From Phallusia mammillata (lineage: Eukaryota), in assembly GCA_965637545.1 (NCBI GenBank), contig OZ281494.1, positions 11,346,001 through 11,410,000 of the forward strand: 64,000 nt of DNA. The letters run 5' to 3'. How positions within the stretch are numbered: position 1 is the stretch's first letter; the number at the start of each line of letters is the position of its first letter. Below the pieces are notes generated by a model, which had not been told where the DNA came from, did not search any database, and was given only the letters and a program-made list of their open reading frames with translations. Of the stretch, positions 37,604 through 63,847 are shown one piece after another. The translations under genes were made by a program, and so were the position numbers.

Positions 37604-40600
37604 ATGGAGCACACAATGGGAGGCAAGACAAAAATGCCAAAAATTGCAAAGGTATGGTATGTAGTATGTACATTACATGCAGCACATTTGATAGGTGATA
37701 TGACTAAAAAAGTTTCATTTAAATATAGTTCAAGTAATTGTGTCATATGTGTTGTTTTTGTCTTTTTTAACTTAATAATCTACAAAAGTAGTATAAAAGG
37801 TAATTTGTACAGCCCCAAATTGTGCAAAACTTATTCTTTTATTTGTGTTTTTTAGGTCAACAACAAAGCACCTGCCCCTGTTCAAATCACAGCCGAACAG
37901 CTTTTGCGTGAAGCGAAAGAACGTGAATTGGAACTTTTACCCCCAGTAAATATGTTATGTGTAGTATTGTGATTGTGATTTTTTTTTTCCTTTTCATATC
38001 ATATCAAGGCAAATGCTTCCCTTAATGTTACAACTGCACTGCTTTTGTAAAACACTATCACGATTCTGTTACACAATTATGAGCGGAACTGATGTTAGTC
38101 CAACAGCATTTGTGTTTAAGTTAAATGTTGTTGTCATTTCTTGTCTTTCTTCAGCCACCTAAACGAAAAATAACTGATCCACAAGAACTAGAGGAATACA
38201 AGTTGAAGAAAAGAAAGGTAACAAAAAGAAATCATTTAAAAGTACACCTTAAAACTCATGTACATTTAACATGTTTAGGGTTTTGAAGACCTGTTAAGAA
38301 AAAACAAATCCTCCATTCAAAACTGGATTAAATATGCAGCGTTTGAAGATAGCATGAAGGAAATTCAAAGGTCTGTTATATGTTTCTATTTTTTTGTGAA
38401 ATAATTAAATTTTTTGAGTAATTTGTTAGCAGCCATTTTAGTGGCATTTACAAGAATTTTGGCAAAATAATGCTTGAATTTATGTTGATTTTATGTTAGA
38501 GTTATCACATTGCAACCGACTGCAAAATTTTCTTCCAAAGGTCTGTTTTTTTTTCCTTTTTTCTTAAGGATAAGGATTTTTTTCAGCAACCATTTAGTTG
38601 AGTTTAAAATATATCACAAAACTAGGATTGATTTATGGTAAATATATTACATTGCAACCGACTGCAAAATTTTCTTTATAGAGCTCGTTCTGTGTATGAA
38701 AGAGGAATTGATGTGGCACATCGGTGCATACCCCTCTGGTTGAAGTATGCAGAAATGGAAATGAGAAACAAACAAATAAACCATGCTAGAAACATCTGGG
38801 ATCGTGCTGTTACTATCCTGCCAAGAGCTAATCAATTCTGGTAGGGTGGTGTTTAAAATTTGTATACATCAAAAAATTGTCACCAATCTCATTACATACA
38901 ATTCTTTCATAAAAAAACAATTAACATATTTATCCAACCACACACAGATATTTAAGTTATTTGAGAGACATCATCATATGATTTTAGTTGTTGATGGGCA
39001 AATGTGGTATACAGATACCAAAAAACTTATCTGGATTAGATTGGTGATCTGGATTAACCTATGTCAATTACTTCTGCATCACAAACTATTTGTACCTCTA
39101 GTTTTGTCCTAATTAGGTGAAGATCCGGATTGTCTGAATTCGGTTTAACAGAGATTAACTGTATATATGTAAAGATTTCTTTCATAAAAGTAATACACTT
39201 TTACAAAACATCAATTTTTAACTGCAATGCCAAAACCGTTACTGACTAATTTAATTGTCAAAAACTGTTCAAGGCACCTTCTTACTCAAGATTTTTACAT
39301 CTAAGCTTGGGAAACCAAGAATAAATGTAAGAAAAGTGTTGAGAATTTTCTTGTATTCAGGTACAAGTATGCATATATGGAGGAGATGGTTGGAAACGTG
39401 GCTGGATGCCGGCAAGTGTTCGAACGTTGGATGGAGTGGGAACCTGATGAGCAAGCCTGGCATTCCTACATTAACTTTGAATTGAGATACAAGGAAGTTG
39501 AGAGGGCTAGACAAGTCCATGAAAAATATATCCTTTAACACCTCACATTGATTTGTGTTAGTTACTGGGTGTACACTGACTAGTTACCAAGCTATGCTAT
39601 TAACCAAATTTTTCATGATAAACTAAGGGTTCACAATCCCTGTGCAAAAAAGCAACTAAGTACCAATTTATGGGAAAGCGCTCAACAGAAATAATCTGTG
39701 TTACAATTGTTTAATGTGTTAATTTACTGTTTGAACTCTAACTAAGTTGGGATGTTAGTTCCTTGACCATTATGTTCACTTGTCTATATTCATCCTGATA
39801 TTAAAAACTGGGTGAAATATGCTCGGTTTGAGGAGCGGTTTGGATACATAATTAAAGGACGACAGGTTTTCGAAAGAGCTGTGGAATTTTATGGAGAAGA
39901 CCACATGGAACCAAATCTGTTCGTCAACTTTGCAAGATTTGAAGAAAGACAAAAAGAGGTAACTTTCCAAACATGTGCATGACTGTAATGCGTAACTGCA
40001 CAACATAAACACATAACAAAAGGAGAGGTAGAGTCAAGCAAGCAACCAAATATTCTTCCTGGCTAAAATACCAAACTTTGACATATTACTTGGTTATTCA
40101 TGTCTAACGCTTCTTTCCATCCCTGCATTGTTGTGCTTGATTATAATCGGTTGAGCATTTAAAAAGGTTGGCTCATTGCTTACCACCAATCTGCATGATG
40201 CCACACAACTTTTTGTCACAGATTTCAAACAAATTGCGCCCAAATTTGTTTTTAACGGCTTTACAACTTGTATTCCGAATGCTTGTTGATAATAAAAGGG
40301 CACAACACTTCTTTTCTGGGGATTTCCCATCTTTCATAAATTGTCCTAATTCGCGAGATTTTCAGCGTGTATTTTAAAACTACCATGATTTCTCTTAATT
40401 CGTGATATTTCCAGGGCAATTTTTAAAAACTATTTAATCACGCCCAGAAGGTGGAATTGAACCACTCTGACGCTAATCAGCTACAGGTTTGAAGCCTGCA
40501 CCCCAGACCACTGAGGATCATCTAGGCACAAATACTAATTCGCGCTCGATATATATAACACTCCACAGCCAGTCAACTTACGTTTGTGGTGACTGTGCGC

Positions 40601-43600
40601 GTGATTTGGGTCTGTGTGCTTGCTTAATGCGTTCAGACTGTCCCGAAGTTCTGCTGAGTCATGCTGACTGTGTTAGTACCTCAGTGGTTTGTAGCTTTAA
40701 TGGTATAATGACAAATATATTTACTTTTCGGTTGCAGTATGAAAGAGCTCGTGTGATTTACAAATATGCCATCGACCGAATTGACAAACAATTAGCCGGA
40801 GACCTTTTCAAAGCGTACACAATTTTCGAGAAAAAGTTCGGAAACCGATCAGGCATCGAAAATGTGATCGTCAGTAAAAGGAAGTTTCAGTATGAAGAGG
40901 AAGTGAAGGTATGAAATTAAAAATTTGCCTTGAATACCATTCGTAGAATACCAAAAGTTGATGACGCACAATGACCCTATAATTTTATAAAGCACTAATT
41001 TGTCAAACGAAAATGTAAAGAAAAGAAATGGCTTGGTTACATTTTTGTGTGTTTACAAAGCAGTCACAGAACACGTTTGCAAAACTGTGCCATCAGTAGA
41101 AATTTATTTTTGCTTGTGTTGAATTTATACCACATCTTCATCAGCTCATATGACTTAATATCGATCATTACAAAAATATTTTATTTGCGTTTGAACGGTC
41201 CGATACTGCTCAGTTTAAACACTCTCAGTTTATTTTTTTTAACAAAGTGGGCACGAAAAATGTTTAAAATCATACCAGTAGCGAATCTTATATTACTGTT
41301 GTTGATTTTATACCGTATTTTGTTGAAAAACAACTTAATCTCGACCATCTTAGGCAAATCCACATAACTACGATGCGTGGTTCGATTATTTGCGTCTTTC
41401 GGAAGATGAGGGGGACGTTGAATCGACGCGTGAAGTTTACGAACGTGCAATCTCGAACATTCCACTTGTGACGCAGAAGCGACACTGGAGGCGCTATATC
41501 TACTTGTGGATTAACTACGCGTTGTACGAGGAACTAGAAAGCAAGGTCAGTTGTGTTGGATTTCAAAAGTCTATGCCACTTAACGATTTTTGTTACTCTG
41601 TATTCGCTTTGCAAATCTGCGATTCAAACTTGGGTAAGTTAATTCTTGGGTAAGCTTTCCTCTTTTTATTAAACATGACTCTATATGTGAACAATTATTT
41701 CTTTTTCTATCCACCGTTTTCAATAAATATATATTTTTCTTTTGCATATAGTTTTTACATCAACTTTATGCAAGTAGCACAAACTTTCAGTTTCTTCGAA
41801 GAAAGGGCAAAAATGCCTAACTAGTTAGTTTACGCATAAACAGCTCCTAATTACACATAACAAAACCTCGTCATGCCGCACAATGAAATATTTTACAGTA
41901 TTTTCTGTGATTTAATTCCTCCATTTTAGGACATTAAAAACCAAAAATATCGTTGTCTGTAAAATGTCTTATTTTTTTGTTGGCCAAACAGTATCTCGTG
42001 GGCAACAATTGGCCCTTGGACCACGCTATATTGGGTGTTTGTTTAAAAGCAAATTAAAACGAAAATATATTGTGTCACTTTTTTATGTTTTATGTGCAGG
42101 ACATGGAACGAGCCCGTGACGTGTACAAGGCGTGTCTTGACGTCATACCACATCGCAAGTTCACATTTGCCAAAATCTGGATCATGTTCGCCCACTTTGA
42201 GATTCGCCAGAAGGATGTGACACAAGCAAGAAAAATATTTGTAAGTCAGTAAACAGTCCGACACTTTTAATGTTTTTAGTTGGGATTTTTTATTGGTTCC
42301 TCGTGACAACGGACCCTTTTTGTATTGTCCTCTTATTGTAGCCCTTTTTGGTGTTTCTCGCTCAAAGTATAGGGTTGGACTTTTACATAGCTGTATAAGG
42401 ATTGGTCACAACATCTTTGTTGTATTGAAAAAATGGAATTAAAGCATGTAAATTAATCGCCTTAAATCGTGCAATGATCCTTAAGAGATACAAAATTCTA
42501 CAAGCATGCTGAGAAAAATACAAGTTGTTTACAAGTTTATGAAAAACAACTAGAATTTGCTTTAGCATCACATCAGTTAAATGACAAATTTGTTGGATAT
42601 TAATTCGTCGTGGTGTCTATAGTCTATACCAGTGGTTCCCAAACTTTATCTACTCGCGTACCATTTTTTGGGTTCATGCAGCGTTCTCGTACCACCTACA
42701 ATAATTGTCAGAAAATTCCAGAATTCACAAATAAAAATGATGTGCAAAATGTTTAATGAATAAAAATGTTACTAAACTTTACTAACTAACTTTACCTTAG
42801 TAACTTTAGTCTTTAGTAACCAAAGGCTCGTAAATATTAAACAAAAATTAGTCAAACTTTTACCGCCCTCGCTACGGTGCCACTGTCAACACAACTAGTA
42901 GCTTATTACAATATCTGACTTTAAGGATTTATTACGTCGTAATAACAGATTCATAACGTCATAAAACACCTATTTCGTCACAAAGAAACCCTGCTTTACA
43001 GTTCGATGCGTCAATCAATACACCAAGGAATTAGAATTTAGTAGGGAATATAGTATGAAATTTCACGCTCTACGTAACTTGTGTAAATTAAAATAATTAC
43101 GATAATCACTAGGAGATCATTTGCGATCGTTTGGTGTGAACTGAATAAGTTGCTCGCGTACCACCTTGGAGACCTTCGCGTACCACTAGTGGTACGCGTA
43201 CCATAGTTTGGGAACCACTGGTCTATACGATGCAATTGGTGGATGTTTTGACGTTTATGTGTTTGTTTTGCAGGGAGTGGCTATAGGCAAATGTCCAAAA
43301 GACAAGCTATTTCGCCAGTACATTGAACTCGAATTGCAACTTCGGGAGTTTGACCGCTGTCGGATTCTCTACGAACGATTTCTGGAAACTGCATCCGATA
43401 ACTGCACAACGTGGTGCCGGTTTGCCGAACTTGAAACGTTGCTAGGTGACGTGGATCGAGCTCGAGCCATATATGAGATTGCCGTCGACCAACCAAGACT
43501 CGACATGCCGGAGGTGGGTTAGTTGTTGGTTCAATGGTTGATTGTGGTTTACGGTTGTGTGTTACTGTGGAGTATGTGTGATGTTTGAATACAAGTTTTG

Positions 43601-46317
43601 TTTTTAATTTAAAGTCAAACTTCGCCCAATTATACGAGCTTAGAATACAAAGACATATATAGGCAATTATGGCAGAATTTAATTCTAATAGTTTAACGTT
43701 GTTTCCTTCACTATTTTAAAGTTTTTAATTTACACTTAAGTTTAAACAACGTTTTATTACGGCTAGGAATTAAAAATTGTTTTTCGTGCCCAAGAGCACA
43801 TGGTTTGGAACTTAAGACGGCATCCCCTTTTTAAATACCTATAATTTCGCCACATATTACTCTTAAGCGGCCATTATCGCCATAAACATAAAGAAACAAC
43901 CCAAATAGATGCACAAAAGATCTTGTACCATAACAGCTTTTGTGGAAAGCCTACATTGATTTCGAGTTGGAGCAAGACGAAAAAGACAACGCACGTAAAC
44001 TGTACGAACGCCTGCTTGACCGAACTCAACATATCAAAGTATGGCTCAGTTATGCAACCTTCGAAGCAACCGGGAACGACAATAACGCTTTCAACAGAGC
44101 CAGGTGCGTGATGTCATTGGGAGTGACGTCATTTTTTTCTTGTGATGTGAAATAGAAAACTACACCCGAAAGAGTCGTTCTCTAGTCGTCTAGTTGCTTT
44201 CGGTTTCCTTTTCTGATTGTTTTAGGTAAAACTATTGAAATACTGTTGTAATGCAAGTCAAGGGTGGTATTGGCAACATTTTGACTCTTGCAGGGGTCGC
44301 TTACTGCCGCAATCGGTTCACGGAAAGTGATGTTTTCCAAACGTGTTTAGTCGTCTGGTTTTGGCGACAAGAACACAATGCAAAAGTTTTCGGTTGTGGC
44401 AGTGGACCACAACCGTTGACATTTAAAAGATAAATCAACACTTAAAATGCCAAGTCAAGTAGAATAGTCCACTTTCCGTAAAAAATACACTCTCTGTTAC
44501 CACCTTGCGAAAGATAGGTCTTTGCGAAAACTGACATAGGCCTACTGTCCCCTGGACGAATGTCATACTTCAATGTTTATCGCACGTAAGAAAACAAATA
44601 ATGGTTTTTTAAAACGTTGGAAATATACGCATTTTTTAGCTTTATTTGGCATTATTTTGTAGGGAAGTTTACAAAAAAGCGAATTCGTCTTTGAAGAACA
44701 GCGAAGCAAAAGAAGAACGACTCATGCTTTTGGAAGCTTGGAAAAAATTCGAGGTCAGTTTTTTAATACATGCAGCCTAGATGTAGTCACTGTAAATACA
44801 CTGGCTACCTCTAATCCTTGTACGGAACTATCATAAATGTACTATGTAAGTTTTCCAGAGCATTACATGTTTAATCATGCAAAATTAAAAAATAAAAATA
44901 AATAAACTGCCTTTTTATTAACCAATCATTACTTCCATACGCCTTTTTGTAAGTGCCTTCGCTTGTCTGCTATTTACATTAGACTAGAGAGAAAAACAAA
45001 AAAGGGAATTCTTTTTTCCCTCTCACTTTCGCGCGCGAGGGAATGTAGTGGCTGTTTTGTTGCATCGACGTCGGCTCCTTCGATAGCTCAGTTGGTAGAG
45101 CGGTGGACTGTAGCGGGTTAAACCTCAGAAATCCATAGGTCACTGGTTCGAATCCGGTTCGAAGGATGTCTTTTTTAAGCTTTTTGCTGTTTAATTTAAT
45201 GTCTAAATCATTTGAAGATTAAACAGAAATAATTCACAAAATCTTTTTGTTGAAACTGGAATAAATAATAGAAACACTAAACACGTACAACTTTATGCAG
45301 TGAATGCTTCGTGGTAAAATTGTTTTCCACAAAATGTGTTCACCACATTTAAGCTTTTTGACTAATTGTTGTTGTTGAAATGTTGCCATTTTAGGTCCCA
45401 AGTACACACGAATGTTCTGAAATTTAAAATTTGTTGGCAACTATCGTCGTTTATCTGTTAAAATGACTTTTTTGTGCCGTTTATTTGTAGACGGAACACG
45501 GAGACGAGACATCACAAAACCAAATCAACCGACTTATGCCAAAGCGAGTGAAAAAGCGAAGAAAAGTTACTACCGAAGGAGGGGTAAGAAGGGTGAAAAT
45601 GTTTACGAAAACTGCTTGGTGTCACAAAATCTTCAAGGTCCTCTTTGTCGAACCTTTACCTCATGAAATACCTTTAGTCAGCCAGCCTTACGTCGTTAGC
45701 TAATCATTTACTCCAAAGAAAACCAGATTGGTCGGTTGTAAAATGTACTGTTGAACCCCCGCTGTAATACACACTGAATACTATCTAAATAATAAGTAGG
45801 GCCAATATTATGAACGACTGCGCCAAGTCAATTGTCATGTGAAAAAATAATGGCTTGGAGTGCCAACTTCGTTGTGTGCAATAGTGTGTAGGACTAGTAG
45901 GACACCATAACTTTGGCACGCGTACAAGAGGTTGCCGCACCCTAACACGGAGCAATGTGGCTTACTTGCATTCTGGCTCACAAACCTATTTGTCTATAAG
46001 TGTGTATTGTAAAACGAAACGTTTGGTGATTGTCAGTTTATAAGTTTAGGCGGGCATGAAACTTTGTAAACTGCAGAGATATGACATAGCAATTACATGC
46101 TGTACAGATTGATGCCGGATGGGAAGAGTATTACGATTACATCTTTCCCGAAGAGGAAGAAGCCCAGCCCAACCTTAAGTTGCTCGCAATGGCAAAGATG
46201 TGGAAGGCCAAGAAGGAAGAGGGAGACTCGGACAGTGATGACAGCTCGGACGAAGACTCGGCAAGTGACGATGAAAATCGAACTGTGGCTGGACCTTCAG
46301 GTTCAAACGACGCATAG
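37604..46317 (+). CDS. CRNKL1: Crooked neck-like splicing factor (HAT repeats), 15 exons, ~700 aa
   Basis: Exons 37604-37651, 37856-37945, 38155-38217, 38279-38370, 38682-38840, 39361-39527, 39780-39958, 40738-40908, 41354-41545, 42100-42240, 43274-43513, 43937-44103, 44663-44753, 45491-45583, 46108-46317 (2103 nt). Diagnostic [32 protein letters not shown] repeats ([20 protein letters not shown]), C-terminal [11 protein letters not shown]...[13 protein letters not shown]. Confidence 0.97.
39528..39779 (+). other. U12-type AT-AC intron (CRNKL1 intron 6)
   Basis: 5' ATATCCTTT, branch TTCCTTGAC at 39759-39767, 3' ...TTCAC; removal joins [21 protein letters not shown] in frame. Confidence 0.95.
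40441..40527 (-). tRNA. TRU-TCA: tRNA-Sec (anticodon TCA), 87 nt
   Basis: Minus strand GCCTAGATGATCCTCAGTGGTCTGGGGTGCAGGCTTCAAACCTGTAGCTGATTAGCGTCAGAGTGGTTCAATTCCACCTTCTGGGCG: 9-bp acceptor stem, long variable arm, UCA anticodon; nearly identical to the metazoan tRNA-Sec sequence as recalled; T5 terminator at 40429-40425. Confidence 0.96.
40549..40592 (-). promoter_or_regulatory. External Pol III promoter of tRNA-Sec (TATA + PSE-like)
   Basis: TTATATATAT at about -22 to -31 and TCACCACAAACGTAAGT at about -49 to -65 from the tRNA 5' end, the spacing expected for snRNA-type Pol III promoters. Confidence 0.75.
42630..43220. mobile_element. hAT (Buster/Charlie-type) MITE in CRNKL1 intron 10
   Basis: TIR CAGTGGTTCCCAAACT / AGTTTGGGAACCACTG; perfect TSD GTCTATAC (42622-42629, 43221-43228); subterminal CGCGTACCA repeats. 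Confidence 0.93.
45077..45166 (+). tRNA. TRY-GTA: tRNA-Tyr (GTA) with 17-nt intron (45114-45130)
   Basis: CCTTCGATAGCTCAGTTGGTAGAGCGGTGGACTGTAG-intron-ATCCATAGGTCACTGGTTCGAATCCGGTTCGAAGGA; intact A and B boxes; lies in CRNKL1 intron 13. Confidence 0.96.
45171..45176 (+). terminator. Pol III terminator of tRNA-Tyr
   Basis: T6 run 4 nt after the tRNA 3' end. Confidence 0.85.
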
Positions 46318-46664
46318 CACTTGTATGAGTTGCGTTCAACAAATGACAATGTTTGACCTAACCACGCGAAAGAGCAGCTAAATCCAAAAAGCTTCTGACA
46401 GTGCCATAGAGGAAGACCTTTGGTGGGTAACGAGAACAATTTCCCCAAAGCCAAGCCCTTGGTGTTTGCTTTATTTTCTATCACAGTCGGCATAACTGTA
46501 CATAAACGTACATTGTACAACGATAAATACACGGACATTAAATCAAATAAAGTACAGCAAATACGTTGCTAGTGTTTTCTAACAAAAGTGTGGGTGGCTC
46601 CCAGCCAGCCCCAACACGTGTTGCATAATATCTCGTCTCAGTTGCTCAAACTGCCAGACTTCTT

Positions 46665-48896
46665 TCAGGCATTGTCATTTGTTTCGTCCATACTGTTGGT
46701 GCCGTTAACGAGTTCTACAAGAGAAGTATTGCAACGTTACCCAAATAAGTCAAAAAACATGCTTCAAGAGTAAAACACAAGTGACACCTTTTTCAGGGAG
46801 ATCCTTTTGCTCTTTCTTCATTCCATTAATAGGTGGCCGTGCAATTGGTTTCATTAATTTCAACTTTGTTCCACACTCCTGTCGTTCGATCTGAACCTTA
46901 TTAGGGTTATTAATTGACATACTGTACGTTGGAAAGACATTTTAAACAGCCCAGTTAGTGCAGTTTGTTACCTGCTGTTTTTCAGAAATTAGTTTGCTGT
47001 CCAAATTGCTCAGATATGCTTGCGGTCCTTCACTGTGTTCAGCGAGAGTATTAATGTCATTTTCTGCAAGATCAATTCCTGAACCACAAGTGCAAACGAA
47101 TTTGTTAATGCATTGATTAAGAGTGTCATGCTTTATGGAGTTAAAAATCTGAGTTTTTAAATGGGTATTGCATTAAAAAAGCAACTTGGTTCGGGGCATT
47201 GACTTATCCTTACCTTTGGGCAGTTTATGTTTTACCTCACCATCAGATATGGCTGGATGAGTTTTGGTGGAAGGGAGCTAAAGAAACAACAACAAAATGT
47301 AAAGGCTAAAGAAATATTAATATTTTGGATGTGTACAAACTTTTTGGATGAAGGCATCAGCCACTTCTTCAGGAGCAGAGTCATCACTGTGAAAATGAAG
47401 TAATTAAATTTTACAAAAGGTCTTCAAAAACAAAAATTGACAGAACCCATAGACTTATAATGAAAAAATGGCCAAAATCCTAAATCCAACAGGATTCTTG
47501 AGTAGGTATTTGGTTGGAAAATGTTTTTTTTAACAAAATTTTAAGAGAAACGTTTATTCAAAAGAATGTCAGTTATTTCATACTGATTGCAATAGACAAC
47601 ATAGGTAGGGTTGCAGACTGCCATTTACAACCATTGACACATTTTTACTTAGCAATCAATTGAATATTGAACCACATAAATCATGCTCTTTCTAGAGACC
47701 TGTCATTTTCATTTTTGGCCTGCTTGTTTGCCTGTTTGTCCATTAGTGAAGTTTTCAGTCTTGACTTTTTCCATGTGTAGTAAAATTTAACAAGCTGACC
47801 AATTTCCTTGTCGGGAATCTAAAAAACATCAATGATAAATGCTATTTCATTGTGAAGATTAAACAGTCTTACCAACTGCTGGACTTTGCGGAAGTTTTTC
47901 CCATGGAATGCATATGCCTGCTCAAACAAAACTTTGTCCTCCATTGACCAATCATCTAAAACATATTTTTATTTTACACCAAAATGAGCACAAAGTACAA
48001 TGCTTATATACAAACATACCAGGCATTGGGGTAAAATTTTGCATGTCGCTTAAGGATTTTGTTACATCGTGTTTGTGCCAGAAAAGCATCCCAAGAGCCT
48101 GCTCCATGTTGTAGTGATGCTTATCTTTTGCAGTGTTACAATATGAATCCACTAATAAAGTTAGACAAAGTTATTCAACAGTAATAAAATGTCATGACAT
48201 ATTTGAGGCCTAACAATCATACATTTCTCATCACGCAAATCTTCACAAGGAGACCAAATCAGCATTCCTTCTTTTGAGTGAGGGCTTTTCTTTTGATCTG
48301 CACAAATAAGTCAAAGAATAGGAAATTAAACCTGCCATCTTACATCTATTACTAAAATATCAAAACGTTTTGACACAACAACTCATTTTTAAGGTTGCTT
48401 TACCTCCATCCCAAGTAGGGACCCTTGCTTGATACATTTCACCCACTCGCATACGCACCTCTGAAATGTGAAAATGAACAAGATTTACGCTTGGAATTAT
48501 CTACATCAGTCTCTTAACATAATAAATCTTACCATAAAGACAAATAGGTAGAGATTGTTCATTGTAACATGAAAGGAATGAGTTATTACCAGGAATGTGG
48601 TTTGTTTTTATGTTCATATTTTTACACAAAAATATGGTAAAAATAGATTAAAAGTGTAGTATTTGAACAAATAAGTACTACTAGGTAAACAAGTTTCTTT
48701 GTTTTTGCTTAAAAACTACACAAATAACCAAAGAAAAAAAAGTACGGGTACCCGGAAGATCGTCCAGACGCCCAGCCTGCATACAGTAGAACTTACGTGG
48801 TTCCTCGTCGAAAAGGCTGTCGTCGCTGGCGTAACCTGATGTACCATTTTCCTTTCTTGGCCATATTCCTGGGTTACTGGTACTGTTACTCGACAT
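46665..48896 (-). CDS. RCOR: REST corepressor (CoREST) homolog: ELM2 + SANT1 + linker, no SANT2 found; 11 exons, ~326 aa
   Basis: Exons (minus) 48896-48752, 48460-48404, 48297-48223, 48151-48020, 47955-47873, 47818-47700, 47386-47341, 47277-47214, 47078-46972, 46890-46788, 46714-46665 (981 nt). [56 protein letters not shown]...[17 protein letters not shown] linker. The last exon is the least certain. Confidence 0.92.
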
Positions 48897-50146
48897 TTTA
48901 ACTTCGGCCGAGGCCAACAGGCGAAACAAAGCCAAGACGCGAAAACACCACCACACTCTTCGCAGGTCGGACAGACTGCGACGGACCGACGGCTCACCCT
49001 CAAAGCACTGTCAGTCAATCGGTATCTGACGTTGCCTGCCTTCACTACTGAAAACCAATATATGACGCATACGAGTATGGGCATGCCATTTTGCAGGGTA
49101 GATGAAATAAATCACTATGGTGACATAGTTTTGATCATGGAAAGTGTAATGAAGTTTGTTCGCGTGTTTTTGCGCGCAAGTTTGTTGTTTGCAATTGGCA
49201 TGTCAAAAAATAGCCATAGCCGAACCGTTGTTGGTTTATGCAGCGATTTTAAAATGAAAATCATCCATGAAACTTGTGTTTGATGTAGGTAGAAACACCA
49301 CCCGGTATGCATTGGAAATAGGCACCCGGTATTGCTACAACCCCGTAAGTACAGTTGTTTAAAAGGGATAGAACCGCATCTTATAAGACGACAGAATAAA
49401 TACCAATATTTGTTGCCTGTACGATATGGTAACCCCCAAACTGAGCTTTGAGTGAAGCATAAGCATTTCTTTTGTTATTTGTAAGAATATGTTATAGCCA
49501 CACAATGAATTTGAGCTGGTCAGTTTCGTTTCCTGTTTGTGACGTCATGTACAAAAAAGCTATCACACATAGAACTTCAAGGGACAAACAGAATGGTAAA
49601 AATGAAAACATTAACCCCAAATGATAATAGTATGTGGACAGAGTAGCTTTTTTTGCCCATCAATAGGCTTTAAAAACGTGAAAAGGGGTTGCGTTTTAAT
49701 TATTTGCTTACGACTCTTTTTCACCCTTGCTAACCACCAAGCTCCCACCTTGTTAAATAAAATAATTCTTTAATTAACATGTTTGACATTTTATTTGTCA
49801 TATTTTTCGACAAATCGCTTTAAAAATCCTAAATGTATTGGGTAAGCACTTTTTTCCAAGGAATGCAGCCTGACTACGGTAACTATAGCCAGGTGATTGT
49901 TTCCGTCATGGTAGTTGGTTTCAATTTGGCGCGTGGTGATACCGGTTTTGTTGCTTCTTGTTATAATGTGACATGTAGTCTGCAGTCTGCACCAACTATT
50001 TTTGTTAAAAAAACTTTACGGATAACATTTTTAATTGTAATTTATTTTGCGCAAAGTCGCGAACATCGTCTGCAACCTGTTTAATATCACACAATGTATT
50101 TTTGTTTGTTTTTTTAGAAAGACTGTAGCCTATAAATAACAGCTAC

Positions 50147-50508
50147 GGGTGACACTAAAACGCTGAATGGGCGGGACGTCGCGAAAACCGCTAAATATCG
50201 GGTTAAATTGCTGACGGTTGGAGCTATTAAGGTTGGGATAAGGTTTTGTAATAGAAAATCATTAAAAAAAATTCCGCCGAACACTACATTCCGCGCCCGA
50301 AACGTCCCGCCATCTCCCGCGACGTCCCGCCATAGCATTTTTGCCTAATGTCAGGAAATAGTTGAATAAGTTTTAGGCAGGGACATTTTTTGATTCATAT
50401 ACTATTATAAAACCTCAACCTAACCCTAATAGCACTAACCGTCAGCAATTTACCCGATATTGAGCGGTTTCCGCGACGTCCCGCCCATTCAGCGTTTTAG
50501 TGTCACCC
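50147..50508. mobile_element. Foldback-type MITE with ~95-bp TIRs nested in the 3.1-kb element
   Basis: GGGTGACACTAAAACGCTGAATGGGCGGGACGTCGCG... mirrored at the right end; perfect 8-bp TSD ACAGCTAC (50139-50146; 50509-50516). Confidence 0.92.
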
Positions 50509-51445
50509 ACAGCTACACTGTACTATAGTTTACTAAAATTTTAAAATATTTTATAGTATACTAAAATAGTATAATACAGGTCATGTGCCCTTTAAGTCTA
50601 CAGCATCAAGTCAGCCACTGGTGAAAGCATATGGTTCTGATGGGCGAAACCTTTTTTCCTGACTGACATGCCATGACCATCACCATTGGGAACATATTGC
50701 TCAACTTTAACAATTTTGCCTGCCAATTACAAAAGCAACAAAATGGTGTTGAAATCAGGGACAAGAAATCAACCAATAAGTGTGAGGTAGGTATCAGATG
50801 GCAGAACACAAACATATTTTTTGTGTCAGATTAAGAACAGACATAAATAACAGAAACTTCACAAGTTAACAGAAAAAACACCCTTGCCTTAAAAAATGAA
50901 TACTCACTCAAAATAGTACATACTGTGTTCCTCATAAAAACTTAACTTTTAGTTACTAATTTTACTAATTTAGAAAGTTCAGGTTTTTACATCAATATTG
51001 ATTCTGAATTTATAAACAGATCTCATAAACAAGTAAAAGATGCTTCTTGCAATGAGGTGGTGTTTACACAAGATGATAGCATCAACAAGAAATTTGGTCA
51101 GTTACTATTGTCATCCAGTGAGTGCATGGTGTTTATGACTGAAAAAAGTGCAACTTCTAGAAATACTTAAAAACATTTTTTTTCTATTTTCTAATACAGA
51201 TTTTGTTGGTTGCAGACTTGCAGTACACTTTCTTTCTGTGCAACCCACTCTCACATAAAATCTCCAGCATGCACGCCTGTGTTATCGGGCTGATAATTGT
51301 GCGCAGGTATTTTTGCAGTGTATATGGCTATACTAAATTTTCTTCCAATGTACAAAATTTATTGCTCATACAATATGTAAATCTGTTGCCATGGTAGTTT
51401 TATTTTTGTTGAAAAGGTTTAGTATTTCTTTAGCAATGTCTACAT

Positions 51446-51605
51446 CAGGGGTTCTTAACCAAGGGTTCTCGTACCCCCAAGGGGTGTGAGAACTGTTCCT
51501 AGGGGGTGCGGGGATGCTGAATCATTAAGGTTGGTTAGATCTATTCTATATAATTAAGAAACCCAGGGGGGTGCAAAAAAAAGAAAAAAAGGTTAAGAAC
51601 CACTG
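51446..51605. mobile_element. hAT (Buster/Charlie-type) MITE nested in the 3.1-kb element
   Basis: TIR CAGGGGTTCTTAACC / GGTTAAGAACCACTG; perfect TSD GTCTACAT (51438-51445; 51606-51613). Confidence 0.9.
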
Positions 51606-53090
51606 GTCTACATTCTACAGGCAGTCAGAATAAAGATTACATATTGTCTGGGTGTTGGTTATTACCCATTGATAAATTAATCATTTCTCCAACCAATTAG
51701 AACTTGGTTGTCGAATACAGTAGTACAAACATTTTTTTTTTCTTGTATGATATTTACCACAAATGACATTTGAAGATAGTTTATATAATGGAAGCTGTTT
51801 TTATGCATGCTGAGTGCAGATTTTTTTCTTGGTACTATTGGGTTATTTTTACATTTTGTGAGGAAGACTCAGTTAAGGTTTAATTAACATCAGGAGCTAA
51901 ATATACCAATAACTTGAGGTTTTTGTTCTAATTGACAAACCTGCCACATCTTTCAGCAAATGTGTTTTTGGTATTTTTGTTGGTAAAAACCTTCTCACTA
52001 CGGTCAAATTTTACTGTACCTATTTCAATCAAATTGTATACTTTCAGTTTAATATTGTAATAAAAATAAATATTCCTTATTTTCTTTCTGAAGTTTTTGA
52101 AAAACTGATGTTTGTTTATTGATTCATTTACAATACAATTTCAAAATCAATATGATTACCTAATTTGCCTTTTTAATGACAGTCACAGGCTTGTACTCCA
52201 TATAACTAAAGGACTCATATTTTATGTGTGTTTAATTTATGAATAAAACAGCCTTTTGCAATGCACTGGCACAAACAGTAAAATGTTACAAAACAGAAAT
52301 GTGAAAGAGAATGTGAAACATGGATTTTTTTTGTTTAAAACAAAAATATGGCTTCTGTAATTACAATTGTATGATTAAATGCTTTTTTAAGAAAATCGCA
52401 AACATGTTTGCTTCAAACTAGCCAGTAAACTGTGTTTTATGTTAGGATATTAATGCATGATCAAAACATTGTGTATGGTGTAGTAGGTTCTGGGTGGAGT
52501 TTATACCAAAAATAAAAAGGCATTTGCACAGCTTTGTGGTCTTCATTTCTCAGAAAAAGTTTCCATTTAAAAAAGGAGAACAGTTCCGTTTTGTTAGTCA
52601 TTTAAGTCGCAATATGGCTGGGTCTCCCAACTGTGTTAAAAATTCGATGTTGAATAAAATAGTTCGAGTACATATATTAAAAAAACAGGACAGTGAAGTT
52701 CACGAGTAGGAGCAAAACTTCATCAGAATCAACCCTAACATTGAATCTTTTATATGGGAGTGTTTATACGCATTTAATGTTTAATAAGTACCTCAAACTC
52801 CTTTTGAGAGCGTACACAATATAACTTACCTACCTAAAACCAAGAACACAAACTGGCGCCAGTTTGTTTACAACGGTATGTGACGTCATAATGCGTACAT
52901 TTTTATTCATGGTAGTCAGGCTGCATTCCTTGGAAAAAAGTGCTTACCAATGTATTGAAAATATGATTTCTTCACTGCGTAAAAAAACTTCACGCTTGGT
53001 AAGTCACGAGTCACGACTTCAGATGAATTGATTGTTTACTCACGAGTGCAACAGGGGTTGTGACTTTTTCGTGACACTTGTCACAGTTTG

Positions 53091-53185
53091 TGACAGGCGT
53101 CAATGACAGGGCTGGGGTGTCACCAAATCAGTGACAGGGCGTCATTAAATCAGTGACAGGGCATTACTAAATCAGTGACAGGGCG
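53091..53185 (+). repeat. Left subterminal array (~5 units of TGACAGGGCGTCA-like motif)
   Basis: Units at 53091, 53104, 53132, 53154, 53176; the last three have 22-bp spacing. Confidence 0.85.
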
Positions 53186-56910: not shown

Positions 56911-56956
56911 GCTCTTTCAGACGACAAAGCAAAAAGACTGTTTTTTCGAAAATTAT

Positions 56957-57656: not shown

Positions 57657-60600
57657 ATGAATTTTGCCAAACATGTTTTGGTAATGCTTGTGCTGTTCAT
57701 TAGTGCAAAGCATTCAAGTTCATTAGACACATCACATCCCGGACAACTACTTAATGGTGAAGTATTTCCTCTGGATAAAAGAAAATCTTCTGAAGTTACA
57801 CAACAATTGGGGGATACACCCATTTCTTATTCAGACAAAGGGTTGCACAATGCTAATGAAAACACATCAATTCATGTTTCTGAAATTCCGAATGAATATA
57901 TTGTTGTGTTTGATGGTTATTACACTCAGTCTGATCGGAAGAATTATGTTGAAGAAGCAATGCAGTCCATGTACATCAGTGATAAGCAATGGGGAATTAT
58001 GCCTCGTTTCAATCCTGCACAAAAGTTTCCAAGTGATTTTGATATTCTTCAAGTTCATCCAAAGATTAAGGCCAAGGCATGTAACAACTTTCACAGCACT
58101 ATGTGTGTCACTAAAAGATATGCTATTTTGAATATTTTTAGCAGGAGATAGTTTCTGACTTCTTATGAGTAGACAATTTTCTTTTTTTCCACAGGACATT
58201 TTGACCAAGTTAACTCACCACCGAATCAAAAGCATATCTACCCAGAAACTGGTTCACTGCAATATGTTGAGCTTTAATGAGAATGATGCCAGACCAGACA
58301 TACAAAATACCAATGAATCACATTTGATACGAAAATCACGCCAACTTTCTGTAAACAATGAACGACACATGAACAAATTATCACTGAAGTCCCACTCCAG
58401 AGCACCACTGAAGGCTATTCCGAAACAGGGGCAAATCACACAGGTATGGTATAGCAGATTTTGCTGAAAACCTTGGAAAGTTGGATATTTTTGAAGGTGA
58501 AAAACTGTATGGCTTAATAATGGTGTGTCCACATTTTGAGTATTGTCTACTTTGATACTTTTTATGGGTCCCCTTCCCTGAAGGGGACACATATTGTTTT
58601 TGTCTATATATTTTTTTTCTTTCTAACGCAGATTTGTTCCCACGTTTTGGTCAAGAAAGGATGGTTCAAACTTTTTCAAATTTACACACATTAAAGATAT
58701 TGGTCTAAAGATGGTCCATGTAAATTTTGACCCCGTTTGATCCCCCGGTTCACCCACAGCCCCCCAAAACGTGAAATTTTTAGCGCGGCTATTGTTCCCA
58801 CGTTTTGGTCAAGAAAGAATGGTTCAAACTTTTTCAAATTTACACACATTGCAGATATTGGTCTAAAGATGGTCCATGTGAATTTTGACCCCGTATTACC
58901 CAGAGGTTCACCCATAGGCCCCCGAAACATAAATGTGTCTAACGCCCGTTTGGTCAAGAAAGACACTGTAGGCAGAAGTACCAAGAGAGTAACTCACTGG
59001 TTTACGATAGCGGGAGGGCTCAGCTTGACGTCGGACAGACGTTTTACGAGACGTCGTTTCAGTGATTAGAAATCAGCTGTTTTGCACAGCAATGCTATGT
59101 CGTTTTATTAAGTGGTCACTCACATTTTCAGTTTTGACGAAGGTTTTACACCTATGACGTGATTTAAACCTAATAACCGTGCTTCGGTTTTGTATATGTC
59201 AAGAAAAACTTTGTTAATAAAAGTTAAGATGAAAAAATTAACTTGAGTTTTGCCAAATAATTGTTTTTTTAAATGCTCGTTGTCAGGTTGGCTGCCGCAT
59301 GATCACGGGTTACTTAAGGTCAACTAGTCGGTATTACAAACACAGCTCAGAACTTTCTTCATAACGTAGCGTTTTTTTGACAATTAATTAAGGAGTCAAT
59401 ACTCAAGGCATGTATAAATTAGGCTTAACAGTATCGTTGAACACGAATGACGGCGTGCTATTGAAAACGGTGTCAAAAGGTCAAACAGTCGTTTGGCGTG
59501 TGCACCCTGAGAGGTTACTACTGGTCAATGGTACTCGTTTTGCGAAACAAAGTTAAATGAAAAACAATTACTTATGTATACACTTGTAGCAAATTGCTTT
59601 TTAATTTAAAGTGTCTGTAACACAACTGTTACAGCTTTCTAAAAAAATTGTGTTCAAAACCCGACCTTGGAGGACTATATCTGGGTCAAAGCAAGAGATT
59701 AGATTTAAGTCTTTGTTACGTTTTTTTAATTTTGTAATTACATGACAATAATAGTGCAAAAAGAATACGAACAATTTTTTTTTATTGTTGGGTTAATGCT
59801 TTCTAAAAATTTGTCCTTAAGAATGTAAAAATCACCGCAACATTTGTTTACTGTAAATCCGCACAAACGCGCGTGTGGGGACCCATCAGTTTTTGTTTAC
59901 AAAAACAATCATATGTGTAGATCAAATGATGTGTATAGTTAATTAGTAAATATCGTATAGAATATATAAAATGGAAGTATATCAGAAAGCCACTCTTCTA
60001 GTTTCAAATGTAAAAAAACATCGATTTTGAGTGCCTAAACTGCCCTAAAAGATGGACATTTGGACCCCCTCTGTTGCAACAGTTAATAAATATTTGCTTA
60101 AGATATAAAACAACCTTTCTCGTGTTGCAGTTACTCCAAGCGCCTCGCTTATGGGAATCTGGATATACAGGCAAAGGTGTCAATGTTGCAATATTTGACA
60201 CCGGCCTACCTGTCAATCATCCTCACTTTAAAAATATCAAGGAAAGAACAGATTGGACAGATGAAAAAACTGCTGATGACGGTTTGGGACATGGCACTTT
60301 CGTTGCCAGTGTTATTGGTGGTTCATACCAGGACTGCCCTGGTCTTGCACCTGATGCAGATTTGTTCATTTTTCGGGTTTTTACTAATAATCAGGTAGTT
60401 TAATGGTACCTTCTGAATTATATATTTAACACCTAAGAATTTGCCAAATTTTACACCTTTTTTGGAGTCAGAAATGTCAACCTTGGGCATTCTAATGTTA
60501 AGTAAGCTATTGTTTGTAGTGTAGCCATTTTCTCTCAGAATTTAGCGCTTTTTATTGGTGAACAGGATGTCATGAATTATTAACCTACCACACTACACCA

Positions 60601-63600
60601 TCAATTTATTTTTACAGCCCAAATGGAATTGCTAATCTTTTTTGTGTGTATGTATCTGTATTTAAACACAAAATCTTTTTTTCAGGTTTCATACACATCT
60701 TGGTTTCTGGATGCTTTCAACTATGCCATTCTCAAGAAAATGAACATTTTAAATTTAAGTATTGGTGGTCCAGATTTTATGGATCAACCATTTGTTGAAA
60801 AAGTGTGGGAACTGACAGCCAATCACATCATCATGATATCAGCTATTGGAAATGATGGTCCATTGTATGGTAAGCTGAAAAGACAAACCCAAAAGTAGTG
60901 CTCACAGTACACCACATACGTGGGTGATATGCATCATGATTTTTTTTAGATAACAAGGCTGAACATGTTTACATTCCGCTTAGATTGTATCACCCAAAAA
61001 TTATGCCCTAATAATATCTCAATTGAAATTATACACCTGAAGAAAGCTTACTACCTATTGTAGATTTGTACTAATTTGCTCTGACTCATTTTTTAACATA
61101 ACTGGTACATACAGAAAACATATTTTGTACTAGATTCAAAGCAACTCAATAAAATGCATGAAATTGGTGTTTTTTTAGGCACTTTAAACAACCCAGCAGA
61201 CCAGATGGATGTAATAGGTGTTGGTGGGATTGATTACAATGACAACATAGCTCGATTTTCATCAAGAGGGATGACTACTTGGGAGCTGCCTGCGGGGTAT
61301 GGAAGATTGAAGCCTGATATTGTCACATATGGTTCCACAGTTCGTGGCTCTGGCCTTCATGGAGGCTGCCGTTCTTTGTCTGGCACAAGTGTAGCTTCAC
61401 CAGTGGTTGCTGGTGCAGTTGCTTTGCTGTTGAGTTCTACCAAGGAAAAGACCAACAGGCAGTTGATTAACCCAGCCAGTGTGAAGCAAGCACTTATGGA
61501 GTCGGCTGAACGATTGCCAAAAGCCAACATGTTTGAACAAGGTCAAGGCAAGTTGGATCTTATCAAGGCTTACCAGGTACAGTTGCATTGTATTACCAAT
61601 ATTTATGGGTCCCCTTCTATGAAGGGGACACATATTGTTTTTGTCCGTATTTTTTTTTCTTTTTTCTGTCTAACGCTGGTTTGTTAAACGCGTTTAATTT
61701 ATTAAAATTTGGACAGATGTTACATATTAATCCAAATTTGATCCTCCTAAAGTTTGACCCCGAATGACCCAGCGGTTCACCCACAGGCCCCCAAAACGTA
61801 ATTTTTTTAAAACGGCTGTACTGACTAAAGTACATCATCTAGGAGTTATGTGCTCTGTTGGTTGGTGCAATGTCAGGTTTTCTAAAGAATTTTCTAACTT
61901 TTAACAGGATTTACCCATTTTTACGCCTTAAACCCCGAAATAATCATTTCTGTCGAAAGCTGGTTTGTCAAACGCGTTTGGTCAAGAAAGAATGCTTTAA
62001 ATTTATTCAAATTTACACAGATGTTAGCTATCGTTTTAAACCTGATACTCTTAAAGTTTGACCCCGAATGACCCAGCGGTTCACCCACAAGCCCCCAAAA
62101 CGTATTTTTTTTAAAACGGCTGTACTGACTAAAGTACATGATCTAAGAGTTTCATGCTTTGTTGGTTGGTGCAATGTAAAGTATTCTAAATAATTTTCTA
62201 ATTTTTTATTGGATTTACCCATTTTTACTCCTTTAACCCCGAAATAATCGTCACCCCTTAAATCCCGAAATAATCTTTTTTGGTTTTAGGCCAGAAATAC
62301 AAGCCCTAATGTGCTGAAATTTGAAACATTTGTTTGCAGTGGTTTACTCGTTTAGTATTCAAAAATTTGCCTTAATCGGCTAAATAATGACTTTCACAGC
62401 CCATAGTTCGTGTACACCGTCAGTCAGACAGAAGTCCCAAGGGAGTCATTCACTGGTTAACGATTAAAACGGTTTTGTGCAGAGCGGGAGGGATCAGCTT
62501 GATGTCCGGACAGACGTTTTAAGAGACAGTCTTTTCGGTGATTAGAAATCAGCTGTGTTTTTTTCCCTTAAGAATCTAAAAATCACCGCAACATTTGTTT
62601 GCTGTAAATCCGCACAGACATGCGTGTGGGGACCCATTAGTTTTTGTTTACAAAAACAATCATATGTGTAGATCAAATGATGTGTATAGTAAATTGGTAA
62701 ATGTCGTATAGAATATATAAAATGGAAGTATATCAAAAAGCCACCCTTCTAGTTGTTCTAGGTTTTAATCACAGCATCCATGTTTATCCTTGACTGTGAA
62801 ACATTGTTTTGTTAAACAAATGTTTACTTTTGTATAAATCCAATAAATTGTATATTGTATTTGTGGACCAACGGAGTGCAATTTAAATTACAATTTCATG
62901 CATGAAATCCCTATTGTTTGCATTGTTTGTTCAGAAACTTTTTAACTGTGTGTTCTAATCTGGATACTGTACATGACTTTAACCATGTATTTTTTACAGG
63001 TTTTGAACTTTTATGAACCACAGATCAGTTTGGTTCCAAGTTACCTTGATTTCACTGAATGTCCATACATGTGGCCGTACTGCACACAACCACTCTACTA
63101 TACTGGAATTCCAGTAACTGCAAATGTTACAATAATTAATGGCATGGGAGTTGTGGGAAAAATTAAAAGTCCTCCTGTGTGGCATCCATATGCAATGCAA
63201 AATGGAGACAAAATTCAGGTTAGACAAGAAAATGTATGCTTTATATTGAAGTTGTAGCTACAAGAAATCTGTGGAAGAGCAATATCATTTATAAAGTTTG
63301 TAACATGTACAACATAAATTTTTAACCAGGAAAATATATGAAGAAAATATATATATATTTGTAATAAAGTATAGAACTACCTCTTTAAATAAAACAAAAC
63401 TAAAAAAACAGAACTGAAATTGTTTTGAGCTTTTAACATTAATGACAACAATTTTGTTTCTGTTGTTCAATACAGGTTTCCTTTTCATATTCAGAAGTGC
63501 TATGGCCTTGGTCAGGCTACATGGCTTTATCAATATCAGTAAAAAAGCATGCAGCCAACTGGGAAGGCATTGTGCAGGGTCATGTTGAACTTACAGTGAC

Positions 63601-63758: not shown

Positions 63759-63847
63759 GTAAAACAGCTCTTGAAAATAGTGCTTAAGAGTATTTGTGAA
63801 CAGACAAAATTTTTGATGCACTTTGTACAAGATAATCAATTTGACGG

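What the first reader, a model, noticed from the sequence alone, without database searches (positions are those of the whole stretch)
46560..47280. CoREST homolog appears to lack the SANT2 domain
Seen: after SANT1 the gene keeps the KLPKG motif and the helical linker ([17 protein letters not shown]), then ends ...[21 protein letters not shown], with CRNKL1 immediately downstream. I found no in-frame SANT2 exon; an out-of-frame WT...ERSLAV*A...RY stretch at ~46690-46630 is only suggestive of a relic. Established: the CoREST linker binds LSD1, SANT2 contacts nucleosomal DNA and is needed for nucleosome demethylation, and SANT2-less RCOR3 isoforms are reported to be inhibitory. Inference: a rewired or dominant-negative-like corepressor, especially if it is the only RCOR gene.
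Basis: partly seen in the sequence, partly recalled or inferred. Interest (0 to 1): 0.7.

Follow-up and report, generated by a model that had tools for sequence, protein, structure and literature searches.

The report
Sea-squirt CoREST gene without SANT2
This ascidian gene is a real, expressed CoREST corepressor that keeps its HDAC- and LSD1-binding parts but has lost the DNA-contacting SANT2 domain, probably when the gene was flipped in the chromosome.

Summary
The minus strand at 48896-46665 carries an 11-exon RCOR/CoREST gene. Its product equals a public protein of Phallusia mammillata, 'REST corepressor 1-like' (A0A6F9DPX7, 313 aa), apart from two residues set by a tandem acceptor. It has ELM2, one SANT domain and both linker helices, then a 36-residue tail modelled at low confidence, with no predicted helix, and a stop.

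No SANT2-coding sequence exists anywhere in the 64-kb window. The same scan detects an untrained, diverged tunicate SANT2 at E 7.5e-13. The six other tunicate RCORs found all keep SANT2.

New here: in Clavelina and Styela the order CRNKL1 > RCOR > MBTPS1 lies on one strand. In this window RCOR alone is inverted, so its shortened 3' end abuts the CRNKL1 3' end. Truncation linked to that inversion is the likeliest cause, but this is inference.

'Dominant-negative' is untested. Whether this is the only RCOR gene of the genome remains open.

This is a new variant of a known kind, of moderate interest.

The parts
48797..48896 (-). RCOR exon 1, ATG at 48896-48894; N-terminal low-complexity part
   Evidence: in-frame model, GT donor; identical to P0154 residues 1-33
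48404..48460 (-). RCOR exon 2, start of ELM2 ([14 protein letters not shown])
48223..48297 (-). RCOR exon 3, ELM2
   Evidence: (ELM2 E 0.12 on the piece)
48020..48151 (-). RCOR exon 4, ELM2-specific helices ([15 protein letters not shown])
   Evidence: REST corepressor 1 chains of the PDB, E 5.6e-17
47873..47955 (-). RCOR exon 5, first half of SANT1
   Evidence: Myb_DNA-binding E 7e-4
47700..47818 (-). RCOR exon 6, second half of SANT1
   Evidence: (SANT 123-166)
47341..47386 (-). RCOR exon 7, acidic pre-linker
47214..47277 (-). RCOR exon 8, ends in KHKLPKG motif before the linker
46972..47078 (-). RCOR exon 9, linker helix 1 and first part of the long linker helix
   Evidence: (REST_helical on the piece), (helices 231-239, 244-275)
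46788..46896 (-). RCOR exon 10 (acceptor 46896; second AG at 46890): end of the long linker helix, then tail modelled at low confidence; phase-1 donor as in Clavelina and Styela
46665..46714 (-). RCOR exon 11 coding part, [16 protein letters not shown] + TGA (46667-46665)
46450..46664 (-). RCOR 3' UTR with AATAAA at 46475-46470 (end about 46450 inferred)
37604..46317 (+). CRNKL1, convergent neighbour; stop at 46317, poly(A) signals 46537 and 46546
57876..63760 (+). MBTPS1 (site-1 protease), conserved neighbour on the other side
49841..52948 (.). 3.1-kb element bounded by 37-nt perfect inverted repeats, between the RCOR promoter and MBTPS1

Best explanation
The locus is the RCOR/CoREST orthologue of the ascidian Phallusia mammillata. 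Species identity is inferred from an otherwise identical database protein.

The gene encodes a 313-residue protein with:
- ELM2 and SANT1, the module that binds HDAC1/2 in studied CoRESTs;
- both helices of the linker, the module that wraps the LSD1 tower;
- then a 36-residue tail modelled at low confidence, with no predicted helix, and a stop.

SANT2, which in studied CoRESTs contacts nucleosomal DNA and stimulates nucleosome demethylation, is gone from the gene, not merely spliced out.

The loss goes with a lineage-specific inversion of this single gene between CRNKL1 and MBTPS1. The inversion placed the gene's 3' end against the 3' end of CRNKL1. The most likely course is that the rearrangement cut or disabled the 3' coding exons and what remained decayed.

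Expected consequence (inferred, not shown): the protein still bridges HDAC1/2 and LSD1 but cannot supply the SANT2 contact to nucleosomal DNA. LSD1 action on nucleosomes in this animal would then be either weaker or dependent on other DNA-binding partners.
For: Gene model and identity:
- The model is in frame with GT-AG borders throughout.
- Exon 4 matches REST corepressor 1 chains at E 5.6e-17.
- The model matches P0154 (A0A6F9DPX7 / CAB3265502.1, Phallusia mammillata) at every residue, apart from the two-residue VQ that the tandem acceptor adds. P0154 has the same C-terminus.

Domains:
- Pfam finds ELM2 at E 5.8e-12, one SANT at 27.2 bits and REST_helical at 26.9 bits, with no second SANT. 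Three tunicate relatives have two.
- The AlphaFold model has helices 231-239 and 244-275 at block-mean pLDDT 78-91, and residues 278-313 at about 30.
- The Clavelina control, folded with the same 40 rows, gives a three-helix SANT2 at pLDDT 86-90.
- The linker residues invariant in 40 RCORs (K259, Q263, Q267) are kept.

No SANT2 in 64 kb:
- tblastn with 8 RCORs finds none.
- An HMM of 85 SANT2s hits only the two SANT1 exons.
- The same HMM finds an untrained, diverged SANT2 at E 7.5e-13, and its second half alone at 6e-6.

Inversion:
- Clavelina has CRNKL1(+), RCOR(+), kinase(+), MBTPS1(+).
- Styela has CRNKL1(+), hyccin(+), RCOR(+), PhyH(+), MBTPS1(+).
- In the window CRNKL1 and MBTPS1 are on the + strand and RCOR on the - strand.

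Expression:
- 16 listed runs of 4 studies that the tool guesses to be RNA hold 0.35-0.40 of the sampled words of 46400-48900 (4 more runs of a fifth study, kind not given, hold 0.35). The spliced mRNA including the terminal exon predicts 0.34-0.36.

Literature:
- The long linker helix is key to LSD1 binding, and the SANT2 contacts are not essential for binding (PMC10721905).
- SANT2 is needed for nucleosomal demethylation (PMC7070449).
Against: - No reads could be laid, so the 46788>46714 junction and the poly(A) site rest on the database protein and on word shares. The word shares cannot exclude 'exons 1-10 plus the CRNKL1 UTR only', which predicts 0.30 against 0.35 observed, with a standard error of 0.03.
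- That P0154 comes from the embryonic de novo transcriptome (PMC7237864) is my inference, not shown by a tool.
- REST_helical falls 0.1 bit short of Pfam's cut-off.
- R347 of the human long linker helix is Q here.
- The link between inversion and truncation is circumstantial. No SANT2 remnant was found beyond the other breakpoint, and no closer relative was available to date either event.
- Exon 10 keeps the ancestral start and a phase-1 donor. This fits decay in place as well as it fits a breakpoint.
- A second RCOR gene elsewhere in the genome is not excluded.
Confidence: 0.8

Rival explanations
1. SANT2 decayed in place through point mutations and small deletions, with a premature stop, independently of the inversion. 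The inversion is an unrelated event in a rearrangement-prone interval.
For: - Exon 10 starts at the same codon (VQ) and ends with a phase-1 donor whose split codon starts with G, as in Clavelina and Styela. So the ancestral intron inside SANT2 may still be there.
- The genes between CRNKL1 and MBTPS1 differ in all three species. The interval is fluid.
Against: - The tail shows no residual similarity to SANT2: 244/500 and 377/500 shuffles score as well.
- A shared phase has a one-in-three chance.
- The truncated end sits exactly at the junction created by the inversion, 348 nt from the CRNKL1 stop.
Confidence: 0.3
2. The 313-residue form is only one isoform or one of two genes. A SANT2-bearing CoREST exists in this animal, from a distant 3' exon or a paralogue elsewhere. 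The short form would then act as a competitor, like the short RCOR3 isoform.
For: - SANT2-less or SANT2-deleted splice forms exist beside full forms in human RCOR3, Drosophila and Nematostella (PMC7070449; PMC9400249).
- The whole genome could not be searched here.
Against: - There is no SANT2-like coding sequence within 46.6 kb downstream or 15 kb upstream, on either strand.
- The gene has its own stop and AATAAA and is boxed in by CRNKL1.
- Only one Phallusia RCOR appeared among the best 120 hits of two searches, in which all other tunicate RCORs ranked on top.
- Clavelina gave one RCOR record and Styela one gene with two isoforms among these hits.
- The RCOR expansion is a jawed-vertebrate event (PMC10721905).
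Confidence: 0.12
3. The missing SANT2 is an artefact of assembly or gene modelling.
For: Only one assembly window was read here.
Against: - A separately deposited protein record has the same C-terminus residue for residue.
- There are no N runs in the window.
- All splice sites are canonical and the stop is followed by a poly(A) signal.
- Two runs of unstated kind (probably DNA; the best holder may be the window's own source sample) hold all words of the stretch.
Confidence: 0.03

Closest known systems
Canonical RCOR1/CoREST (human RCOR1, PDB 2V1D, 2XAF and others; tunicate orthologues in Clavelina lepadiformis and Styela clava)
   Same: - ELM2, SANT1, the KLPKG motif and both linker helices, with the invariant K/Q/Q residues.
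- 63% identity to Clavelina over 280 residues.
- The same chromosomal neighbours, CRNKL1 and MBTPS1.
   Different: - No SANT2 and no C-terminal helix.
- The gene is inverted relative to its neighbours.
- The protein is 46-80 residues shorter than the other tunicate RCORs.
Short RCOR3/CoREST3 isoform lacking SANT2 (Upadhyay et al. 2014, as reported in PMC7070449 and PMC10721905)
   Same: A CoREST with ELM2 and SANT1 but without SANT2. In mammals it does not support nucleosomal demethylation, and grafting SANT2 onto it restores that activity.
   Different: - It is a splice form made beside SANT2-bearing RCOR1/2/3 and acts by competition.
- Here the gene itself lacks SANT2 and no full-length partner was found.
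- The review describes that isoform as poor at recruiting LSD1, whereas here the whole linker is kept.
Nematostella NvCoREST splice variant with a partial SANT2 deletion, and the Drosophila CoREST isoform without SANT2 (PMC9400249)
   Same: The linker is intact and SANT2 is missing. The Nematostella variant still binds NvLsd1.
   Different: Those are alternative isoforms of genes that also make the full protein. Their function is unknown.
Single-SANT CoREST-like proteins outside animals (PMC9400249)
   Same: ELM2 plus one SANT domain.
   Different: Those are thought to be ancestral. Here the single-SANT state is secondary, since six other tunicate RCORs have SANT2.

Membership tests
RCOR/CoREST family | ELM2 domain | tested here: met
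   Pfam PF01448 E 5.8e-12, 46.7 bits against a cut-off of 21.7, residues 37-86. Exon 4 matches REST corepressor 1 chains at E 5.6e-17.
RCOR/CoREST family | SANT1 directly after ELM2 | tested here: met
   Pfam PF00249 27.2 bits against a cut-off of 24.4, residues 123-166. The model shows helices from 126 on (126-139, 143-149, 155-172).
RCOR/CoREST family | Helical linker that binds the LSD1 tower (REST_helical) | tested here: inconclusive
   PF20878 scores 26.9 bits against a cut-off of 27, profile positions 3-50 of 65. Both helices are predicted, the long one at block-mean pLDDT 78-91. The invariant residues K259, Q263 and Q267 are kept. Binding itself was not tested.
RCOR/CoREST family | SANT2 at the C-terminus | tested here: not met
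   No second Myb/SANT in Pfam. The tail 278-313 has pLDDT about 30 with no helix. No SANT2-coding sequence exists in the window, with a sensitivity control.
RCOR/CoREST family | Orthology by descent (best hits and conserved neighbours) | tested here: met
   The best hits are tunicate RCORs, E 1e-105 to 1e-81. The gene lies between CRNKL1 and MBTPS1, as in Clavelina and Styela.
RCOR/CoREST family | Forms a complex with HDAC1/2 and LSD1 | not testable with these tools
   Needs a pull-down or co-expression experiment. Only single chains can be folded here.
Dominant-negative short CoREST isoforms (RCOR3 short form) | Coexists with and competes against a SANT2-bearing CoREST | tested here: inconclusive
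   No second Phallusia RCOR appears among the best 120 hits, and no alternative SANT2 exon exists in the window. The whole genome was not searchable.

The most novel reading that the evidence does not exclude
Phallusia has a single CoREST gene, and that gene lost SANT2 for good when it was inverted. The LSD1-CoREST-HDAC complex of this chordate would then work on chromatin without the SANT2-DNA contact that is held to be required for nucleosome demethylation. That would make it a natural test of what SANT2 is needed for and of what can replace it.
Probability: 0.4. Interest if true: 0.6.

Novelty: new variant of a known kind. Interest (0 to 1): 0.45.

Why it matters
SANT2 is described as the part of CoREST that lets LSD1 act on nucleosomes. 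Forms without it are known only as splice variants beside full-length proteins.

A chordate whose CoREST gene encodes only the SANT2-less form, with the HDAC and LSD1 docking parts still conserved, would show that the scaffold role can be kept while the nucleosome-contact role is lost or moved to another factor. Phallusia embryos are an established experimental system, so the prediction can be tested directly.

The locus is also a clear small case of a domain loss that coincides with a single-gene inversion inside conserved microsynteny.

Tried and rejected
1. Laying RNA reads on 43150-49100. I masked those places in all later local scans and sent none of their letters to any search tool.

2. 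The out-of-frame relic (WT...ERSLAV*A...RY). SANT2 HMM scores are -0.2 and -0.4, and 24/500 and 42/500 shuffles do as well. Rejected as evidence.

3. An in-frame relic. By eye, [14 protein letters not shown]|ELVNGTNS lines up with VRKYG..DF..I|..ILGTKS of SANT2. MAFFT also puts it there. But 244/500 and 377/500 shuffles score as well. Not usable.

4. A weak repeated tblastn match at 41443-41381 on the minus strand ([14 protein letters not shown] against FFVNYRRRFN, E 3-17). It is the antisense of a conserved CRNKL1 coding exon. Chance.

5. Weak matches at 60248-60343 and 61430-61639. These are MBTPS1 exons.

6. A search for the SANT2 remnant expected on the + strand at 49-53 kb after an inversion. 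Nothing scores above noise.

7. PDB searches with the linker exons alone. No hits.

8. A word search with the Clavelina SANT2 region, to find any Phallusia protein with such a domain. Only the query came back, which says nothing.

9. Exact look-ups of P0154 and of Styela isoform X2 in the contig collection. Neither is on record. Styela isoform X1 worked.

10. Earlier notes of this scan. None mentions CoREST, LSD1 or related words on this genome.

11. No closer relative of Phallusia (Ascidia, Ascidiella, Corella) and no named Ciona RCOR turned up in the protein searches.

Full report
**What is in the sequence**

On the minus strand between 48896 and 46665 I could join eleven exons, all with GT-AG borders, into one open frame. 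The frame ends ...DLPEK|[16 protein letters not shown], with TGA at 46667-46665. An AATAAA follows at 46475-46470.

The convergent neighbour on the plus strand is CRNKL1. Its stop is at 46317 and its own poly(A) signals are at 46537 and 46546. The two stops are 348 nt apart, so the 3' UTRs probably overlap.

**What the gene is**

- The 43-residue exon 4 alone matches REST corepressor 1 and 3 chains of solved LSD1-CoREST structures at E 5.6e-17.
- A whole-library search with that exon brought in full-length relatives.
- A follow-up search found P0154, 'REST corepressor 1-like' of Phallusia mammillata (UniRef A0A6F9DPX7, nr CAB3265502.1), 313 residues.
- My model equals it at every residue except two (VQ). 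These are explained by a tandem acceptor: the real exon 10 starts at 46896, six bases upstream of the AG I first chose. All homologues read ...QVQ... there.
- I therefore take the window to be Phallusia mammillata or something indistinguishable from it at this gene.
- The record carries the same C-terminus, ...ETNDNA.
- A de novo embryonic transcriptome of this species, with names taken from the best Ciona hit, was announced for deposition in 2020 (PMC7237864). That it is the source of this record is my inference.

**Domains**

Pfam on P0154 gives:

| Family | Residues | Score |
|---|---|---|
| ELM2 | 37-86 | E 5.8e-12 |
| Myb/SANT (single) | 123-166 | 27.2 bits, cut-off 24.4 |
| REST_helical | 223-270 | 26.9 bits, cut-off 27; profile positions 3-50 of 65 |

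Clavelina lepadiformis (P0152), Styela clava (P0157) and an unnamed tunicate transcript (P0011) each give two Myb stretches in the same call.

An AlphaFold model built on 40 RCORs shows the ELM2 and SANT1 helices. It also shows a short helix at 231-239 and a long helix at 244-275, with block-mean pLDDT 78-91. Residues 278-313 have pLDDT about 30 and no secondary structure.

As a control, Clavelina was folded with the same rows. It gives the same linker helices plus a three-helix SANT2 at 290-328 (pLDDT 86-90) and a C-terminal helix.

In the nomenclature of PMC10721905, the long helix carrying R347, Q350 and Q354 is the one with the key role in LSD1 binding. [quoted passage not shown]

The linker columns that are invariant in all 40 sequences are kept here: K259, Q263 and Q267, the last two being the equivalents of Q350 and Q354. 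The equivalent of R347 is Q (and the alignment).

So the docking parts look conserved and SANT2 is absent.

**Is a SANT2 exon hiding somewhere?**

- I scanned the whole window on both strands, with places 45075-45113 masked. tblastn used eight RCORs, six of them tunicate.
- I also searched an HMM built from 85 distinct RCOR SANT2 segments against all 3436 stop-to-stop fragments.
- The HMM's only real hits are the two SANT1 exons (E 8.5e-6 and 0.11). Everything else is at E 0.9 or worse.
- Sensitivity control: the most diverged tunicate SANT2, which was not in the training set, scores E 7.5e-13 whole and 6e-6 for the half encoded by the second exon, in the same search space.
- The window covers 46.6 kb downstream of the stop and 15 kb upstream of the start, and the gene is boxed in by CRNKL1. 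A functional SANT2 exon of this gene is therefore very unlikely.

**The proposed relic**

The out-of-frame stretch reads [29 protein letters not shown]. Against a tunicate-plus-outgroup SANT2 profile and against the broad profile it scores -0.2 and -0.4 bits. 24 and 42 of 500 shuffles of it do as well.

The in-frame tail can be lined up by eye with helices 2-3 of SANT2, and MAFFT does so. But 244 and 377 of 500 shuffles score as well.

Neither counts as evidence.

**Relatives and the rearrangement**

All six other tunicate RCORs retrieved have SANT2. They are Clavelina, Styela and four unnamed transcripts from Logan and JGI data.

The genomic loci of two of them could be fetched:

| Species | Gene order, all on one strand |
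|---|---|
| Clavelina | CRNKL1, RCOR, an HRI-like kinase, MBTPS1 |
| Styela | CRNKL1, hyccin, RCOR, a PhyH gene, MBTPS1 |

A translated comparison shows that the window's CRNKL1 (37604-46217) and MBTPS1 (57876-63760) are collinear with both, on the plus strand. RCOR (48884-46969) matches on the minus strand.

Two orders of ascidians share the uninverted state, so the inversion is derived in the Phallusia line and involves this one gene.

Its result is that the shortened 3' end of RCOR now faces the 3' end of CRNKL1. The last stretch with detectable homology is exon 9 by tblastx and about residue 283 in protein alignments.

The space between the RCOR promoter and MBTPS1 is filled by two elements:
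- a 3.1-kb element with 37-nt perfect terminal inverted repeats (49841-52948);
- the 4.2-kb transposon noted earlier by the scan (53041-57295).

**How the loss happened: inference**

The coincidence of breakpoint and truncation makes a rearrangement-linked loss the likeliest course.

Against a clean cut in the intron before SANT2: Clavelina and Styela encode SANT2 helix 1 at the end of the exon that begins VQ/IQ. That exon is followed by a phase-1 intron whose split codon starts with G. Phallusia exon 10 begins at the same VQ and also ends with a phase-1 donor after a G.

This suggests that the ancestral intron survives and that exons 10-11 contain what is left of the SANT2 coding sequence, decayed beyond recognition. 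The breakpoint would then lie in or after exon 11.

A shared phase has a one-in-three chance, so I give decay in place independent of the inversion a probability of about 0.3. No remnant was found on the plus strand at 49-53 kb, where a cut-off 3' part would have been left.

**Expression**

I worked beside those places afterwards.

What remains is the following:
- 16 listed runs of 4 studies, guessed to be RNA, hold 0.35-0.40 of the sampled words of 46400-48900. Four more runs of a fifth study, kind not given, hold 0.35.
- Two runs of unstated kind hold all of the words.

The shares expected under different assumptions are:

| What the RNA contains | Expected share |
|---|---|
| Exons 1-10 only | 0.24 |
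| Exons 1-10 plus the CRNKL1 UTR | 0.30 |
| Exons 1-10 plus the RCOR terminal exon and UTR | 0.34 |
| Both UTR regions | 0.36 |

The sampling error is about 0.03. The data fit a spliced mRNA that includes the terminal exon, but they are not decisive on their own. The database protein adds the C-terminus.

**How it most likely works**

By homology with studied CoRESTs, ELM2-SANT1 would bind HDAC1/2 and the linker would bind the LSD1 tower. The protein should therefore still assemble the three-part complex.

Without SANT2 it lacks the contact to nucleosomal DNA that is reported to be needed for nucleosome demethylation. Mammalian RCOR3 without SANT2 does not support that activity and regains it when SANT2 is grafted on (PMC7070449). 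A Nematostella variant with most of SANT2 deleted still binds Lsd1 (PMC9400249).

If this is the only RCOR gene, 'dominant-negative' is the wrong word, because there would be nothing to antagonise. The complex would instead be a constitutively SANT2-less one.

Only one Phallusia RCOR appeared in two searches in which every other tunicate RCOR ranked on top. The lists are cut at 120 and the genome could not be searched, so the paralogue count stays open.

**Comparison and verdict**

By descent this is the RCOR orthologue. By domain architecture it fails the ELM2/SANT1/SANT2 definition used in PMC10721905.

SANT2-less forms are known as splice variants in human, fly and sea anemone. A gene that can make only that form, in a chordate, is a new variant of a known kind.

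The protein is already in public databases under an ordinary name. In the open-access library I searched, no listed paper dealt with a tunicate CoREST lacking SANT2; the one paper holding all three search terms names tunicates only in its taxon sampling.

Interest is moderate.

Noticed in passing
window 40441-40527 (-); L001 3409-3495 (-); L005 1310-1396 (-): A tRNA-SeC gene lying antisense in a CRNKL1 intron is conserved in position and orientation in Phallusia, Clavelina and Styela. The nested arrangement is therefore old.
   Followed up: partly
window 49841-52948: 37-nt perfect inverted repeats (49841-49877 / 52912-52948) bound a 3.1-kb element with inner palindromes at 50141-50514. It has no long ORF and sits directly upstream of the RCOR promoter, next to the transposon noted at 53041-57295.
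   Followed up: no
window 46338-46356 and 46665-46683: A 19-nt inverted repeat (17/19) has one arm 20 nt past the CRNKL1 stop and the other over the RCOR stop codon. It is about what chance gives in 8 kb, but it lies exactly at the junction made by the inversion.
   Followed up: no
window 46890-46896 (-): Tandem AG acceptors 6 nt apart at RCOR exon 10. The upstream one adds VQ and is the one used in the database protein. The downstream one would give a 311-residue form.
   Followed up: partly
window 41381-41443 (-): The antisense translation of a conserved CRNKL1 coding exon reads [14 protein letters not shown]. This is a chance look-alike of the FFVNYRRRFN motif at the end of SANT2, and it gave repeated weak tblastn hits.
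   Followed up: yes
window 46317-46714: The convergent genes CRNKL1 and RCOR have poly(A) signals (46546 on +, 46475-46470 on -) that imply 3' UTRs overlapping by roughly 100 nt.
   Followed up: no
I did not examine them further, masked them in local scans and sent none of their letters to any search tool.
   Followed up: no
L001 13242-15272; L005 6976-8751 and 19318-22819: The genes between CRNKL1 and MBTPS1 differ in each ascidian: an intronless HRI-like kinase in Clavelina, and hyccin and a PhyH gene in Styela. None of the two tested by tblastn, the kinase and hyccin, was found in the window (E < 1e-3).
   Followed up: partly
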